This document shows positions 23,716 to 28,603 of a stretch of 28,603 bases of DNA, in pieces (the first letter of the stretch is position 1; each line of letters starts with the position of its first letter). Position numbers and translations under genes: made by a program. The DNA is from Vitrella brassicaformis CCMP3155 (Eukaryota > Protista > Chromerida). The stretch spans positions 1 to 28,603 of the forward strand of contig CDMY01000705.1 in the NCBI GenBank assembly GCA_001179505.1. The letters run 5' to 3'. The notes below the pieces were generated by a model. It saw nothing but the letters and a program-made list of their open reading frames with translations. It was not told the DNA's origin and did not search any database.

Positions 23716-25813
23716 TTGCTTGATGTGACCTCTCGTGCGAAAGGTGTGTGGCGTGATGATTGTGTGAAGCGGTATGGTTGTTGTGTGAAGTGCGTAAGGC
23801 CCTTGTGTCTGTCTGGTGTCGGTGTGTGTGTCTCTGTGTGTGTCTGTCTTTGTGTCGGCAGCTGCCACACTTGTCTTGCCAGTGGTGCATTGCTTGTCTC
23901 ATCGCGTCTCAATCGCACACAGGCAGACAGACATACACAGACAGATGGGCTGTGATATGTGTTTTGGGTCGTCGGCAATATCGTTCAGTGTGTGGCTGCG
24001 GTGGTATGTGGTGTGTGGGGATGAGTGGGAGAGGGACAAAGGTCGATGAGTTCAAGCGACGGATGTGCGCTCATTAGCTCCAGTCCAGACTGAAGGAAAT
24101 TTGTGCAGGTCTCCCCATCGATGGGTCTGCCCATGGGTGTGTGTGGGAAGAGTCAATCATAGGGCCAAGTCGAGAGAGACATGTGAAGGCGAGTGCCTTT
24201 CAGTGATCGGTCCATATATATCTTATCTAATGTCCATCCTACTTTTCTGGCTAGGCATGACATCCACTCAACGATCCACCCACGCCGCCCACCCACTGGT
24301 CAGCCCGCCGTGAGTGAGTGATCAGATATCGACAAAACAGCCAGCTGGGGGGCTGACTGACTGAGTCAAGGCAGCAGCAGGCAGCCGCTAGCAAGAAAGA
24401 CACACACGTACGTCGCGCGATGGATGGATGGATGGATGGACGGACGGATGGATGCAACGCCTTCGATCGCTCACACACTCATGCAGTGTATATACAGCCA
24501 CGGCAGCCGAGCGATCAATGACTGACTGTACACACATGAGCACACAGGCGGAGAGAGAGAGAGATGTGCATGTGTGTGTGTGTATGTGTGTGCTAGCCAC
24601 ACGCGTGATGCATACGTCATGTGTGTATGCTCTCAGTCACTGCCTACACTAAGGAGTCCCTCCCCCCAACCGAAAGAGGCGCCGACCTGCGCGTCTGTAC
24701 AGTGCAGGTGCGTGCGGGAAAAGCACCAAAACCCTCCCCTCCCTCCTCTCGCCGATCTCGGCTGTCTGTCTGCTTGTCTGTCTGTCTGTCTGTGGCGCAT
24801 CGGTGTGGGCGATCGATCAAACACACGATGCAGCAGCCGTGAGGATGAAACCCTGCCAACCACCCCCACCCCCTTGCTACGCATCTCATGCCATCCTCAG
24901 CTAAGCCGGCGTGACTGTGTGGAGCGAACACATACGCAAACACACAAGACGGTGTGGGTCGGTGGAAATCTGAGAGAGTGAGGGAGTGAGTGAAGCGCTT
25001 CAAAACGGACAGTGAGTGTGGCAAAACCGCCGCTGGAATGCAAAAGGGGAGGGAAGAAGCGCATTCAAGCCAAGGTGAAACAGCACCCCACCCAATGCAG
25101 CGATGCATGCATCGATGGACCCCCTCCTCCACTAATTCTGCCTCGTGTGATGCATTCATTATGCACCTGTGAGTGCACGGCCAGGCAAAAGGCGGCGGGC
25201 AAAGTTACCCTCTCTCCACACACAGCACAGAGGTACCACCAGGCACACCCATCTCAGGCAGGCAGGCTGGAAGCAACACGATATGAGCCAAAAGGGGCGT
25301 CCAAGCAGCATGTATGTATCCATCGACGCGACGAGTGGGCCTTCGCGCGATGCAATCAGCCTAGCTAGCTAGCTTGCTATGGCCATATCTGCCTCTCCGT
25401 GGGCATGGCGTCTGTCTGCACAAGGAATGGAATGGGATGGGGCGAAGGAGGGCGACAAGGGACCTGGGGGGCAGCAGTGCGGTCATCCCGGCTGCTGCCT
25501 GCCCTCCAGAAGCTAGCTATCCGTGCCGACCATCCGGCGAAATGACACCCACCTCTCTGTCTGTCTGTCTGTCTGCCTGCCTGTGTCTTTTGCTGTGAGT
25601 GAGTGAGTGGTCGGCAAGTCTGTCTGCACAAATGAATTAGAGAGGCAGAGCGTTCATTCGTCAGGCTGGCAGGCTGGCAGAAGCTACGTACGCTAAGAGC
25701 AACAAGACATCCCTGCACCCACTCCCCAATCTGCACACCGTCCCTCTCCCCCTTCCCCCTCCCTCATCCCTCTCCCTTGCTACATCATCATTATCATTGC
25801 ATTGCCACTATCG

Positions 25814-27508
25814 TTATGAGAGCGCCGCCCAGATGAGCTGCGGCAGGTGGGACAGAACGGTCGAGAAGACAATGGCCATGAGCACCACCACCACGGCACT
25901 CTTGACGTTCGCCACGCTAAGGCCCCACACCCGGCCCTCCCGGCCGTCGTCCGCGTCGCCCTCCCACCCACCGCACTCGCCATCGTCGGACGATGAGGAC
26001 TCCTCGCCCATTTTGTCTATGGACGGCGGGACGGGCTGCCCATTAGCTGTGCCACCCACACCCACGGCCCCGCTGCTGCCGCTGCTACTGCCGCCAACGC
26101 CCTTGGATGCCGCACGCACCTCGGCTTCGCACAACTCGCCCAGGTAGGCCTGACATAAAGACACCACACAGACGCATACACACAAACAAGGAGAGAGGGA
26201 GGGCGTAGGTACCTGGAGAGGCCTGGTGCGGTTGGCCCTGGTGTGAGTGGTGAAGCCGCTCCAGTCGCCCCCCTTGTGTGTGGGTGTGGAGGGGGCCGAC
26301 TCGTTTGCATGGTGTGACAGGGACGGGGAGGGGGCCACACTGACGCACGGCGGCTGTTGGTGGTGGGGCTGGTGGTTGGTGTGGGTGGTCGTCATGTTGT
26401 GGTGGATGTGCAGGTTGGGCGTGGTCGTCCCCGCACTCGTACTGGCACTGGCCTGGGTGCGCGTCACGCTCGCAGACGACTCGGTGTGATCCACCGCCAC
26501 CCCGCCGCCGCCACCAGCACCGCCCCCAGCCCCACTAAGAGGTTGGTCGAGTGGCCTGGGGCGGTATGTGATGACCCGGCAGGCGCCTGCGTCAGGGTGC
26601 TGGTTGATCTGGTGGGCGATCATCTTGACGGCGCGCATGAGGCGCTCGGGGTCGTTGGCGGCCACGCAGACGACCCGCTCGCTGCAGGACTCCTCGGGCG
26701 AGACGAACAGCGGCGAAATCGTCACTGTCGCACCAGTGTCCTCCCGGATCGACTTAACGTGCGCCTGACACACACACAGACAGACACCACTCAGCACGTG
26801 TGTCATGTGCCGGATGCGTCAGGTGTGGTGGCCCACCCCGTTCGGTCCGATGAGGAATCCGACGACCATCCGCGGCACGACGAACTTACAGCTAACCCGG
26901 GCGAGTTTGAGCATGTCGGCGCCCCTGCAGACGCGGTCGACCACCCAGTACATGGCCTGCTGCACCATCTCCCGCTGCCCACTGATGGCGGCCACCCGCT
27001 CGTTGGTGCCGGGGAAGTAGCAGCCGTGCGGCGACAGGACGATCTTGGCGCCCGTCTCCCGCTGCAGCTCCATGATGGTGCGCCCGCTGCGGCCGATGAT
27101 CGAGCCCGCCACCGTGTTGGTCACCAACATCTTCAGGTACCTGCACAACACAAACATGGCAGCAGTGTGGGGGGGCGGGTGGGTGGGCTCCTCTCTCCCC
27201 TGGTTTCTGTCTGGATGTGCTGACTGAGTCACCCACCAGTAGGGCGCGTCTTCAACGTCGTGGCGGACGTCCAGGTCGCCCAACAGGTTACTACTGCCCG
27301 TGCTAGTGGCCGCACACCCGAACGCTCCGCCGCCAAACACTGACGGCCCGCTGGGCTCTGGGAAGTTGGGCATGTTCATCTGCGCCACAGGGGCAGCTAT
27401 GGGTGCGAACATCTGGCCGTCATTGGCCTTGTGGGGGGCGGCCGCTGTGGTCAGGGGCGGCACGGTTGCCATGCCCGATGGAACGAAGGGGAGGGCTGAA
27501 GCCTTCAT
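25814..27508 (-). CDS. Nova/BTR1-type KH-domain RNA-binding protein (2 KH) with an N-terminal PAM2-like motif and a C-terminal transmembrane anchor, 487 aa
   Basis: Exons 27508-27237, 27140-26837, 26764-26213, 26149-25814 (total 1464 nt, in frame). KH1: YLKMLVTNTVAGSIIGRSGRTIMELQRETGAKIVLS...FPGTNERV. KH2: KFVVPRMVVGFLIGPNGAHVKSIREDTGATVTIS...ERVV. The protein starts MKASALPFVP and ends SAVVVVLMAIVFSTVLSHLPQLIWAALS*. Confidence 0.88.
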
Positions 27509-28603
27509 CTCAATCAATCGACAACCAACTCAACCATCAAACCAAACCACCTGCACACCCACAAACAAACGAAGGCACAGAGAGAGAGAGAGGGAGGGAG
27601 GGAGGGAGCGTTAATGTCAGAGAAAACCCAGCGGACGAGTGTGCTGGTGGCCTTCTGACCTTCAGGAGCGGCCTGTTTGCCCTCGACTAAGACAAATATC
27701 GCCAATGAGCCAATGAAAACCTCCACAGCTGCACAACACGCACATCCACACGTGCGCATTGGTCGGGCCAGCGTCCAGTGCGTTCCCATCGCCATCCTCT
27801 GCCTTACCGACGGATAGATCTCTGCTGTCTTCTGCTTATGGGATGGGACGGGCGGCAGCTGGGAAGGGAGAGATGCGGGGTGATATATGGCTGAAAAGTG
27901 GAAAGGGGTGAGTGAGGTGATGCTGCTGCAACTGCCCGTCTTAGGATACAGGGAAGATATCGAAATGCCATCCGCAGCAGCGGTTTCAGGGAGCACCCTA
28001 GGCGGCCTGGCCATCATCCTGCGCGCTGAGACTGGGGGCTACTGGGGGCACTCTGGAGTTTGTGGACGGACGTGGAACTTTGACCTTTTCAACTCGAAGA
28101 TCCGAAAGCATCATTCATCGGCCAGCGTGTTTGCAAAGAAAGACTGACCGTCGAGTAGCAGCACCGTCATCCCGAGTCCGCCCGACTCGCATCGCTTTCC
28201 ATCGCATCGTTTCCCTCTCTTTCTTCGCATCGTTCTCCCGCCTTTGCAGCGCCGCAGAGCGCTGTCGTCGTGTGGGGTCTGTGCGACCCTCCCGCTCCGC
28301 AGTGCAACGACTGTGGACACCCCCCTCTCCTTCCCATTTTGCCTTTCTTCCCCCGTTCGGCTCAACTTGAGAGCCTTCCATCCTTTGCTCCATCCAGTGA
28401 CCCCCTCGGGTCGCCTGTCGGTCTCCACTGTGCACTGAGTGAGCGTCTCCCGTACTGCAATGGGCGCCCAACAAAGCAACCACGTCAGGCCCTCTGAAAA
28501 GGTCAGCTGAGTAGCCAGCCATGGGGGATGCACTGTGCGTGACTTCACTGTGTGGGTCGCATTTGTTCAGACGTGCTGCGGGTGCTTTCTGTCGCGTCAC
28601 GAG

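What the first reader, a model, noticed from the sequence alone, without database searches (positions are those of the whole stretch)
25814..27508. Tail-anchored Nova-like KH protein with an N-terminal PAM2-like motif: candidate organelle-surface mRNA tether
The protein begins MKASALPFVP, matching the PAM2 core L-x-x-x-A-x-x-F-x-P with the initiator Met in the Leu position; an in-frame stop at 27530-27532 supports this start. It has two KH domains with intact GxxG loops (GRSG, GPNG), a long disordered H/T/P-rich then acidic region, and a single hydrophobic helix at the extreme C-terminus. Nova, PEPPER and BTR1 relatives are soluble. Sequence-specific RNA binding, PABP recruitment and a tail anchor together suggest a receptor for localised translation at the ER, mitochondrion or complex plastid. 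I do not know of this architecture being described.
Basis: partly seen in the sequence, partly recalled or inferred. Interest (0 to 1): 0.7.

Follow-up and report, generated by a model that had tools for sequence, protein, structure and literature searches.

The report
Membrane-anchored Nova-like RNA-binding protein family
This alga expresses an RNA-binding protein whose tail probably anchors it in a membrane; it belongs to a conserved, unstudied family shared with Toxoplasma, Eimeria and Cryptosporidium that may hold messenger RNAs at a membrane surface.

Summary
The minus-strand gene at 27508-25814 has four coding exons and encodes 487 aa, identical to the annotated Vitrella brassicaformis protein. 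One 1,944-nt spliced contig joins all four exons, including the last. The protein has a disordered N-terminus, a KH1-KH2 tandem closest to Nova-1, a roughly 190-residue disordered linker and one C-terminal hydrophobic helix.

The architecture is not unique, and it has been noted before. The ten best relatives among 1.84 billion proteins all share the two-KH layout, and nine keep a clear C-terminal transmembrane segment (the exception is the Cyclospora model). They include Toxoplasma TGME49_212980, Besnoitia, Cystoisospora, Eimeria and Cryptosporidium. They form a 100/99-supported group apart from 50 soluble Nova/PCBP-like proteins. [quoted passage not shown] I found no functional study.

The PAM2 idea is partly supported. 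MKASALPFVP fits the refined PAM2 definition at positions 3, 7, 10 and 12, but not at 4 and 5. Toxoplasma, Besnoitia and Cystoisospora carry a near-canonical PAM2 (LDASAPEFFPL) as a conserved island in their linker. Toxoplasma and a gregarine share an N-terminal LPxFV[P/A] motif that lacks the invariant Ala.

Best reading: a cytosol-facing, tail-anchored mRNA-binding tether, probably on the ER. PABP recruitment is plausible but unproven. It is a new variant of a known kind, of moderate to high interest.

The parts
27809..27962 (-). Upstream 5'UTR exon. Its 5' limit is not determined.
   Evidence: The loose end of the transcript contigs beyond 27729 maps at 27809-27838. The loose part is up to 154 nt long in X1.
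27660..27729 (-). Second 5'UTR exon
   Evidence: Transcript contigs X1, X2 and X6 cover 27658-27729. The joint 27548 to 27658 (cut +2) gives an intron at 27551-27659.
27514..27537 (-). Seven-codon upstream ORF (MVELVVD, then stop) in the mature 5'UTR. It ends 5 nt before the main ATG.
   Evidence: Read from the sequence. It lies inside the transcribed block 27235-27548.
27237..27508 (-). Coding exon 1, residues 1-90 plus 2 nt: the disordered N-terminal region
   Evidence: pLDDT is about 40.
27479..27508 (-). N-terminal motif MKASALPFVP (PAM2-like; also an instance of LPxFV[P/A])
   Evidence: PAM2 definition from PMC2854688.
26912..27241 (-). KH domain 1, residues 90-167, GxxG = GRSG. The range includes intron 1 (27141-27236).
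   Evidence: Pfam KH_1, E 8e-18; AF2 pLDDT above 90; Nova-1 KH1 alignment.
26837..27140 (-). Coding exon 2
26600..26896 (-). KH domain 2, residues 173-247, GxxG = GPNG. The range includes intron 2 (26765-26836).
   Evidence: Pfam KH_1 on both halves; AF2; Nova-1 KH2 alignment.
26549..26599 (-). Family-specific extension after KH2, residues 248-264 (HP..C....Y.R motif)
   Evidence: P249, C254 and Y259 are invariant, and H248, R260 and F264 nearly invariant, in alignment A1. Signature scan.
26213..26764 (-). Coding exon 3
25913..26554 (-). Disordered linker, residues 263-455: first T/S/G/H/P-rich, then acidic. The range includes intron 3 (26150-26212).
   Evidence: Composition; pLDDT below 50.
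25814..26149 (-). Coding exon 4, with the stop codon at 25814-25816
25820..25912 (-). C-terminal hydrophobic helix, residues 456-486 (core 460-478): the predicted tail anchor
   Evidence: Translation; hydropathy; AF2 helix at pLDDT 85-91; conserved in relatives.
25600..25813 (-). 3'UTR. It runs at least to 25600, and the transcript contig continues beyond the stretch that was laid.
   Evidence: X6 record 19 covers 25600-26148.

Best explanation
The gene encodes a tail-anchored, cytosol-facing RNA-binding protein. It belongs to a conserved chromerid and apicomplexan family of two-KH, Nova-like proteins that end in a single transmembrane helix.

Shown:
- The mRNA and its splicing.
- The KH1-KH2 tandem, with Nova-1-like sequence and predicted fold.
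- The disordered N-terminus and linker.
- The C-terminal hydrophobic helix.
- Conservation of this layout in Toxoplasma, Besnoitia, Cystoisospora, Eimeria, Cryptosporidium and a gregarine.

Inferred:
- With no N-terminal signal sequence and only 9-11 residues after the hydrophobic core, the protein would be inserted post-translationally, by the GET pathway or an equivalent. Everything upstream of the helix would then lie in the cytosol.
- A strongly hydrophobic helix followed by an uncharged tail points to the ER or nuclear envelope as the most likely membrane.
- The KH tandem would bind short single-stranded RNA elements. The roughly 190-residue flexible linker would let it reach mRNAs or polysomes near the membrane. 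The protein would thereby tether selected mRNAs for local translation, storage or repression.

My odds: tail-anchored KH family member about 0.9; membrane mRNA tether about 0.5; the Vitrella N-terminus being a real PABP ligand about 0.35.
For: - The gene model equals the annotated protein, and one spliced contig joins all coding exons.
- KH_1 is found twice. By sequence, Nova-1 KH1/KH2 (2ANN) is the best solved relative, E 8.8e-23 over residues 91-249. By fold it is also best, with TM 0.91 and rmsd 2.2 A.
- Only one hydrophobic segment exists, at the C-terminus, and it is modelled as a confident helix. The first 60 residues contain no signal-peptide-like hydrophobic core.
- Of 150 best hits among 1.84 billion proteins, P0002-P0011, except the Cyclospora model P0007, have a C-terminal hydrophobic segment, as do P0054, P0117 and P0135. 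So does P0127, just over the cut (KD 1.67), but it is not a family member. The other hits do not.
- The family shares the signatures SPHGxYFPGT, SPLFV and HP..C..Y. It is one side of a branch with 100/99 support.
- Members are named (Toxoplasma TGME49_212980 and others). cgd7_720 is annotated with a C-terminal TM.
[quoted passage not shown] Vitrella fits at Phi3, A7, F10 and P12. Shuffles give such a match anywhere in the disordered parts 3.7% of the time, and at residue 1 0.11% of the time.
- In Sarcocystidae, LDASAPEFFPL is one of only two conserved islands in a linker of 21% identity.
- Plasmodium cytoplasmic PABP has an MLLE domain (PMC5760745).
Against: - No localisation, RNA-binding or interaction data exist for any family member that I could find.
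- The Vitrella motif has Met rather than Leu, Pro or Phe at position 3, Lys rather than Asn or Ser at position 4, and Ala rather than Pro, Val or Thr at position 5. It sits at the extreme N-terminus.
- The N-terminal motifs that look homologous, in Toxoplasma (ASLPRFVA) and the gregarine (STLPAFVP), have Leu where PAM2 needs the invariant Ala.
- Eimeria, Cryptosporidium and the best hit P0002 show no PAM2-like match outside the KH domains.
- At least one complete relative inside the clade (P0013, 272 aa) is soluble.
- The KH1 GxxG loops of most members lack basic residues.
- Assigning the membrane from helix hydrophobicity and tail charge is only a rule of thumb.
Confidence: 0.6

Rival explanations
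1. The protein is a tail-anchored KH protein, but the N-terminal motif is not a PABP ligand. It would be an instance of a different, family-conserved short motif, LP(x)FV[P/A], that binds some other partner. Only the Sarcocystidae would have acquired a true PAM2, elsewhere in the protein.
For: LP.?F[VI][PA] occurs within the first 30 residues of the Vitrella, Toxoplasma and gregarine proteins. It occurs 0 times in 67,506 residues of 140 non-family KH proteins. The Toxoplasma and gregarine versions lack Ala7, which is invariant in PAM2. Toxoplasma carries both this motif and a separate canonical PAM2.
Against: The pattern was defined after seeing the data. Besnoitia and Cystoisospora, close to Toxoplasma, do not keep it. 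The Vitrella version does satisfy A7, F10 and P12, and it shares A-S-A..F.P with the Sarcocystidae PAM2. No known ligand class matches LPxFVP.
Confidence: 0.3
2. The anchor sequesters or regulates a Nova-like nuclear RNA regulator. The protein would be parked on the ER or nuclear envelope and released by proteolysis, like membrane-tethered transcription factors. Alternatively, it would act at the membrane in mRNA decay or quality control rather than in localised translation.
For: The closest soluble relatives are Nova-type splicing regulators. The long disordered linker offers room for a cleavage site. A soluble two-KH relative, P0013, exists within the clade.
Against: I saw no protease site and no nuclear localisation signal. 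A PAM2 in Sarcocystidae points to cytoplasmic poly(A) mRNP biology. The anchor is kept across very distant lineages.
Confidence: 0.1
3. The C-terminal hydrophobic stretch is not a membrane anchor. It would be a hydrophobic oligomerisation or degron helix, or a result of low-complexity drift, and the protein would be soluble.
For: No dedicated TM predictor could be run. The gregarine segment is only moderately hydrophobic, KD 1.55.
Against: Hydrophobic character, length (about 17-22 residues) and position (2-11 residues from the end) are conserved, while the sequence is not, as expected for a membrane span. AF2 gives a confident helix. CryptoDB annotators also called a TM in cgd7_720.
Confidence: 0.07

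Closest known systems
Cryptosporidium parvum cgd7_720 and Toxoplasma gondii TGME49_212980 (uncharacterised KH proteins)
   Same: They share the two Nova/Pasilla-like KH domains, the family signatures (SPHGxYFPGT, SPLFV, HP..C..Y), a disordered linker and a C-terminal transmembrane segment, and they lie in the same strongly supported clade. cgd7_720 itself was not fetched; these features were checked on its C. felis relative P0117, which lacks the SPHGxYFPGT and HP..C..Y signatures. cgd7_720 and TGGT1_212980 are reciprocal best BLASTP hits (PMC10734933 S3 Fig).
   Different: Identity over the full length is only 22-29%. N-termini and linkers cannot be aligned. The Toxoplasma group carries LDASAPEFFPL in the linker, whereas Vitrella has its PAM2-like motif at residue 1. 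The coccidian motifs STVCSTAxGS and DxFxAFxxF are absent from Vitrella.
Nova-1 / Nova-2 / Pasilla (metazoan splicing regulators)
   Same: The KH1-KH2 tandem is the best match by sequence and by fold: 2ANN, E 8.8e-23, 37% identity, TM 0.91.
   Different: Nova proteins have a third KH domain and no membrane anchor. The protein here has no KH3 and ends in a hydrophobic helix, and its clade is separate from sea-urchin Nova and other soluble relatives.
AKAP1 (AKAP121/149) and Drosophila MDI
   Same: These are membrane-anchored KH-domain proteins that recruit specific mRNAs to an organelle surface for local translation. AKAP1 has been proposed to act through LARP4 (PMC12650760); LARP4 docks on PABP through a PAM2w motif (reference list of PMC5760745).
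   Different: AKAP1 is anchored by an N-terminal mitochondrial targeting sequence. It has one KH domain plus a Tudor domain and a PKA-binding helix, and it is not a close KH relative. It is a functional analogue only.
PAM2-containing PABP partners (Paip1/2, eRF3, ataxin-2, USP10, LARP4)
   Same: A short disordered motif with Ala7, Phe10 and Pro12. The Vitrella A-L-P-F-V-P resembles the eRF3 PAM2-N ending A-K-P-F-V-P, which I recall from memory. The Sarcocystidae LDASAPEFFP fits at positions 3, 7, 9, 10 and 12.
   Different: No known PAM2 protein that I am aware of is tail-anchored or carries Nova-like KH domains. The Vitrella motif starts at the initiator Met and is atypical at positions 3 to 5.

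Membership tests
Type I KH domain (Pfam PF00013) | Significant match to the KH_1 profile and a beta-alpha-alpha-beta-beta-alpha fold | tested here: met
   KH_1 E 8.1e-18 for KH1. KH2 matches on both exon halves, 1.4e-4 for the C-terminal half. AF2 secondary structure is E-H-H-E-E-H twice, at pLDDT above 90.
Type I KH domain (Pfam PF00013) | Intact GxxG loop between helices 1 and 2 | tested here: met
   GRSG (residues 107-110) and GPNG (189-192). G107, G110, G189 and G192 are invariant in the family alignment.
Nova / Pasilla orthologue | KH1-KH2 tandem of the Nova type | tested here: met
   2ANN is the best hit by sequence and by fold.
Nova / Pasilla orthologue | Third KH domain near the C-terminus, and a soluble protein | tested here: not met
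   No KH match lies after residue 262. That region is disordered and ends in a hydrophobic helix. The protein falls in a clade separate from soluble three-KH relatives, including sea-urchin Nova-1.
Tail-anchored membrane protein | A single transmembrane segment close to the C-terminus with a short tail after it | tested here: met
   The only KD window above 1.6 starts at residues 450-465. The core is 460-478, with 9-11 residues after it. AF2 helix at 456-486.
Tail-anchored membrane protein | No N-terminal signal peptide and no other membrane span | tested here: inconclusive
   The maximum 15-residue KD in the first 60 residues is 1.07, and the N-terminus is disordered. SignalP and DeepTMHMM are not available.
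Tail-anchored membrane protein | Post-translational, GET-type insertion and an integral membrane association | not testable with these tools
   This needs fractionation and insertion assays.
Apicomplexan/chromerid tail-anchored two-KH family (cgd7_720 / TGME49_212980) | The shared signatures SPHGxYFPGT, SP[LI]FV and HP..C..Y, plus clade membership | tested here: met
   All three signatures are present in P0001 to P0011. The 15-row clade has 100/99 support.
PAM2 motif (MLLE ligand) | Hydrophobic residue at position 3 (usually Leu, occasionally Pro or Phe) | tested here: inconclusive
   Met1 is at position 3. It is hydrophobic but not among the residues listed in PMC2854688.
PAM2 motif (MLLE ligand) | Polar Asn or Ser at position 4, and Pro, Val or Thr at position 5 | tested here: not met
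   Lys2 and Ala3 occupy these positions. A Pro-to-Ala change at position 5 lowered Paip2 affinity five-fold.
PAM2 motif (MLLE ligand) | Invariant Ala7 and Phe10, and the usual Pro12 | tested here: met
   Ala5, Phe8 and Pro10 of the protein.
PAM2 motif (MLLE ligand) | Location in a disordered, accessible region | tested here: met
   pLDDT is about 46 for residues 1-10.
PAM2 motif (MLLE ligand) | Conservation as a PAM2 in orthologues | tested here: inconclusive
   It is not conserved in place. Sarcocystidae carry LDASAPEFFPL in the linker. The N-terminal LPxFV[P/A] of Toxoplasma and the gregarine lacks Ala7. Eimeria, Cryptosporidium and P0002 show none.
PAM2 motif (MLLE ligand) | Direct binding to a PABP MLLE domain | not testable with these tools
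   This needs ITC, pull-down or a modelled complex. An MLLE domain is reported for Plasmodium PABP1. The Vitrella PABP was not examined.
AKAP1-type organelle mRNA receptor | N-terminal mitochondrial anchor, a KH plus a Tudor domain, and a PKA-binding helix | tested here: not met
   There is no Tudor match and the anchor is C-terminal. This is a functional analogy only.

The most novel reading that the evidence does not exclude
The common ancestor of chromerids and apicomplexans would have had a tail-anchored, Nova-derived mRNA receptor. It would hold polyadenylated mRNAs at the ER or an organelle surface through two grips: KH-RNA contacts and a PAM2-MLLE contact with PABP. That would be a convergent counterpart of the animal AKAP1/MDI-LARP system, and a previously unrecognised route to localised or stored translation in parasites such as Toxoplasma, Eimeria and Cryptosporidium.
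Probability: 0.3. Interest if true: 0.75.

Novelty: new variant of a known kind. Interest (0 to 1): 0.58.

Why it matters
Translational control and mRNA storage are central to apicomplexan life-cycle transitions. However, I know of no membrane-bound mRNA receptor described in these organisms.

This work turns a one-off curiosity in an alga into a defined, conserved family. Members occur in genetically tractable parasites, notably TGME49_212980 in Toxoplasma and cgd7_720 in Cryptosporidium.

The family offers clear handles for experiments: a tail anchor, a Nova-type KH tandem, and a near-canonical PABP-docking motif in the Toxoplasma group. If the tether model holds, it would be a second, independent case of the design that animals use at mitochondria (AKAP1). 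The family's apparent absence from Plasmodium falciparum would then be informative. If it does not hold, the family is still an unexplained, conserved way of placing a Nova-like RNA-binding module on a membrane.

Tried and rejected
- The word-index protein search with the C-terminal two thirds and with the KH region found only the protein itself.
- The same search with the family alignment was swamped by low-complexity candidates and returned only four proteins. It says nothing about the family's range.
- The Atlas search gave only generic KH clusters at low scores.
- A search for the bare number 212980 in papers was useless, because it matched DOIs.
- PF3D7_0302800 was considered as a Plasmodium orthologue, because it appears in a PfGet3 BioID table. 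I rejected it. Published BLASTP links it to TGGT1_226320 rather than TGGT1_212980, and it is absent from the predicted tail-anchored list.
- Two other identifiers (PFC0135c, PBANKA_0402600) were my guesses from memory and should be ignored.
- The hyperLOPIT supplements and an in vivo CRISPR screen supplement, as held, do not list 212980. Some files may be cut, so this is no evidence about localisation.
- The Sidik 2016 and Padgett 2017 papers are not held.
- A.EF.P matches in non-family KH proteins all lie inside the KH1 'YFPGT' loop and are not PAM2 motifs.
- FFAT, EVH1 and SH3 ligand readings of the N-terminal motif were considered from memory. None fits.
- A GPI-signal reading of the C-terminus was rejected because there is no signal peptide.
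Full report
**Observation**

The region is a eukaryotic gene on the minus strand. Choosing GT..AG introns that keep the frame gives four coding exons: 27508-27237, 27140-26837, 26764-26213 and 26149-25814. Together they make 1,464 nt, or 487 codons plus a stop. A database search with the C-terminal part returned one protein, P0001, the annotated 'K Homology domain-containing protein' of Vitrella brassicaformis CCMP3155. It is 487 aa and letter-for-letter identical to my model. Earlier notes of this scan had already placed the genome in a Vitrella-type chromerid.

**Expression and splicing**

Public runs hold this stretch. I laid four of them on 25600-27800. Three carry contigs with joints exactly at the three coding introns (27141-27236, 26765-26836, 26150-26212) and at a 5'UTR intron (27551-27659). 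All have GT..AG ends on the minus strand.

- One 1,944-nt contig (X6, record 19) joins every coding exon, the 3'UTR down to at least 25600, and two 5'UTR exons.
- A fourth run (X3) gives a colinear, unspliced contig, as genomic DNA would.
- The loose end beyond 27729 maps to 27809-27838, so there is a third 5'UTR exon.

The runs are not on record as RNA, and their spliced form is my reason for reading them as cDNA. Introns 1 and 3 are also in frame and free of stops, so even intron retention would keep the C-terminus. An in-frame TGA lies 21 nt upstream of the ATG.

**Anatomy**

- Pfam finds KH_1 twice. The second domain is split by intron 2.
- AlphaFold2, run with an 11-sequence family alignment, gives two confident KH folds (residues 90-167 and 173-247, pLDDT above 90).
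- It also gives a disordered N-terminus (1-86), a disordered linker (263-455) and a confident C-terminal helix (456-486, pLDDT 85-91).
- The linker is T/S/G/H/P-rich and then acidic. The only strongly hydrophobic window in the protein is 460-478, with mean Kyte-Doolittle 2.27.
- The first 60 residues have no signal-peptide-like core.
- The KH tandem is closest to Nova-1 KH1/KH2. By sequence: PDB 2ANN, E 8.8e-23, aligned end to end. By fold: TM 0.91 on the target, rmsd 2.2 A, 37% identity.

'Nova-like' is therefore accurate for the tandem. There is no third KH domain.

**Relatives**

The word-index search found nothing but the protein itself, so I used the one exhaustive HMMER search. It found 3,482 proteins at E 0.001 or better, and 18 at 1e-30 or better.

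I scored the last 45 residues of each of the best 150 for hydrophobicity. P0002-P0011, except P0007, have a strongly hydrophobic C-terminal segment, as do P0054, P0117 and P0135. P0127 just passes the cut (KD 1.67), but its C-terminus reads as a KH3-type ending and it is not a family member. The others mostly end in a KH3-like sequence.

A cluster look-up names the family members:

- Toxoplasma gondii TGME49_212980, and the Hammondia orthologue in the same cluster;
- Besnoitia besnoiti;
- Cystoisospora suis;
- Eimeria tenella and Eimeria media;
- Cryptosporidium felis;
- several unnamed transcript contigs.

A second look-up adds Cyclospora (P0007, whose C-terminus looks mis-modelled) and the gregarine Protomagalhaensia wolfi (P0122, with a weaker hydrophobic end). 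It also shows that the neighbouring soluble proteins include sea-urchin Nova-1.

The family shares sequence signatures that the soluble proteins lack: SPHGxYFPGT in KH1, SPLFV in KH2 and HP..C..Y after KH2. A maximum-likelihood tree of the KH tandem from 65 proteins puts the 15 family rows on one side of a branch, with support 100/99 (quick version).

The hydrophobic segment keeps its length, character and position, 2-11 residues from the end, while its sequence drifts. That pattern is typical of a membrane span. One complete relative inside the clade, P0013 (272 aa), is soluble, because its contig has no further ORF.

**What was already known**

A 2023 survey of apicomplexan KH proteins lists TGGT1_212980 as 'hypothetical protein'. 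[quoted passage not shown]

Its BLASTP table shows the two as reciprocal best hits. The best P. falciparum hit for each is the soluble Nova-like PF3D7_1415300, which pairs with TGGT1_217880 instead. The architecture has therefore been noticed at the annotation level, and P. falciparum appears to lack the family.

I found no paper on localisation, RNA targets or phenotype of any member. The supplements I could read hold no entry for it.

**The PAM2 question**

- positions 1-2 are not involved in binding;
- position 3 is hydrophobic, usually Leu;
- position 4 is Asn or Ser;
- position 5 is Pro, Val or Thr;
- Ala7 and Phe10 are invariant;
- Pro12 is usual (PMC2854688).

MKASALPFVP places Met at 3, Lys at 4, Ala at 5, Ala at 7, Phe at 10 and Pro at 12. 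The core and the hydrophobic position fit, and positions 4 and 5 do not. After shuffling the disordered parts, such a match appears somewhere in 3.7% of trials and at residue 1 in 0.11%.

The relatives give two pieces of information.

1. Toxoplasma, Hammondia, Besnoitia and Cystoisospora all carry LDASAPEFFPL in the linker. Leu3, Ala7, Glu9, Phe10 and Pro12 all fit, with Asp at position 4. It is one of only two windows with at least 10 of 12 identities in a linker whose mean identity is 21%. This is a good PAM2 candidate, and it shares A-S-A..F.P with the Vitrella motif.
2. The pattern LP.?F[VI][PA] occurs in the first 30 residues of the Vitrella, Toxoplasma (ASLPRFVA) and gregarine (STLPAFVP) proteins. 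It does not occur at all in 67,506 residues of 140 non-family KH proteins. That suggests an old N-terminal motif, but the Toxoplasma and gregarine versions have Leu where PAM2 needs Ala.

Eimeria, Cryptosporidium and P0002 show no candidate outside the KH fold. Plasmodium PABP1 has an MLLE domain (PMC5760745). I did not check the Vitrella PABP.

My reading is that PABP docking is likely for the Sarcocystidae proteins and possible, at about 0.35, for the Vitrella N-terminus.

**Mechanism**

The mRNA, the domains, the helix and the conserved family are shown. The rest is inferred.

- With no signal peptide and only a short tail after the helix, insertion would be post-translational. The KH tandem and N-terminus would then face the cytosol.
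- A very hydrophobic helix with an uncharged tail fits the rule of thumb for ER-destined tail-anchored proteins, as summarised in PMC8629386. Some relatives have tails of +1 to +2, so other membranes are not excluded.
- The long linker would let the KH tandem reach mRNAs near the membrane.
- The closest functional analogue is AKAP1, an outer-mitochondrial-membrane KH protein that recruits specific mRNAs for local translation (PMC12650760). It differs in anchor, domains and ancestry.

**Verdict**

The novelty claim is too strong.

I file this as a new variant of a known kind, namely membrane-anchored KH proteins. It belongs to an annotated but unstudied chromerid and apicomplexan family.

Noticed in passing
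window 27514-27537 (-): A seven-codon upstream ORF (ATG GTT GAG TTG GTT GTC GAT TGA) sits in the mature 5'UTR and ends 5 nt before the main ATG. The 5'UTR is long, has at least two introns, and may be under translational control.
   Followed up: partly
window 27141-27236 and 26150-26212 (-): Coding introns 1 (96 nt) and 3 (63 nt) are multiples of three and free of stops. Retention would insert 32 or 21 residues in frame without losing the tail anchor. Intron 3 would add a Cys/Val-rich hydrophobic stretch.
   Followed up: no
window 27568-27616 (-), inside the 5'UTR intron: A CCCT/CT microsatellite lies near the acceptor side of the 5'UTR intron. TG/GT-rich runs lie near other acceptors (for example 26766-26790). 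This echoes another first-reader note on polarised intronic microsatellites in this window (s1-239540).
   Followed up: no
P0004-P0011 and P0003 (alignment A1, columns about 495-506 and 686-705): All coccidian family members share two further linker motifs that are absent from Vitrella: D/E-x-F-x-A-F-x-x-F and S-T-V-C-S-T-A-x-G-S-x-D-x-L. The second is the only other conserved island in the Sarcocystidae linker. Their partners are unknown.
   Followed up: partly
P0001 residues 375-391 (window about 26107-26154 (-), spliced across intron 3 to 26213-26218): AF2 places a low-confidence helix (AYLGELCEAEVRAASKG) in the linker. It aligns with a loosely similar [SC]-L-x-x-x-hydrophobic-x-E-V segment in Eimeria, Cryptosporidium and unnamed relatives. 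It may be a conserved amphipathic interaction helix.
   Followed up: no
L002 (ERR13711080 contig), gene at 172-990: This is a complete 272-aa two-KH relative (P0013) inside the tail-anchored clade, with no hydrophobic C-terminus and without the conserved Cys after KH2. It is either a soluble offshoot or a sister lineage. The organism is unknown.
   Followed up: partly
P0007 (Cyclospora cayetanensis OEH78869.1), C-terminus: This protein ends ...STLLLLRSSWLLVHLPPLPYVDAT where its Eimeria relatives have a clean transmembrane segment. It looks like a gene-model or frameshift problem in the last exon rather than a real loss.
   Followed up: no
PMC8629386 S2 Table: Two other P. falciparum KH / RNA-binding proteins, PF3D7_0302800 and PF3D7_0605100, appear in the PfGet3-BirA proximity fraction with no peptides in the control. 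Neither is an orthologue of this family.
   Followed up: partly
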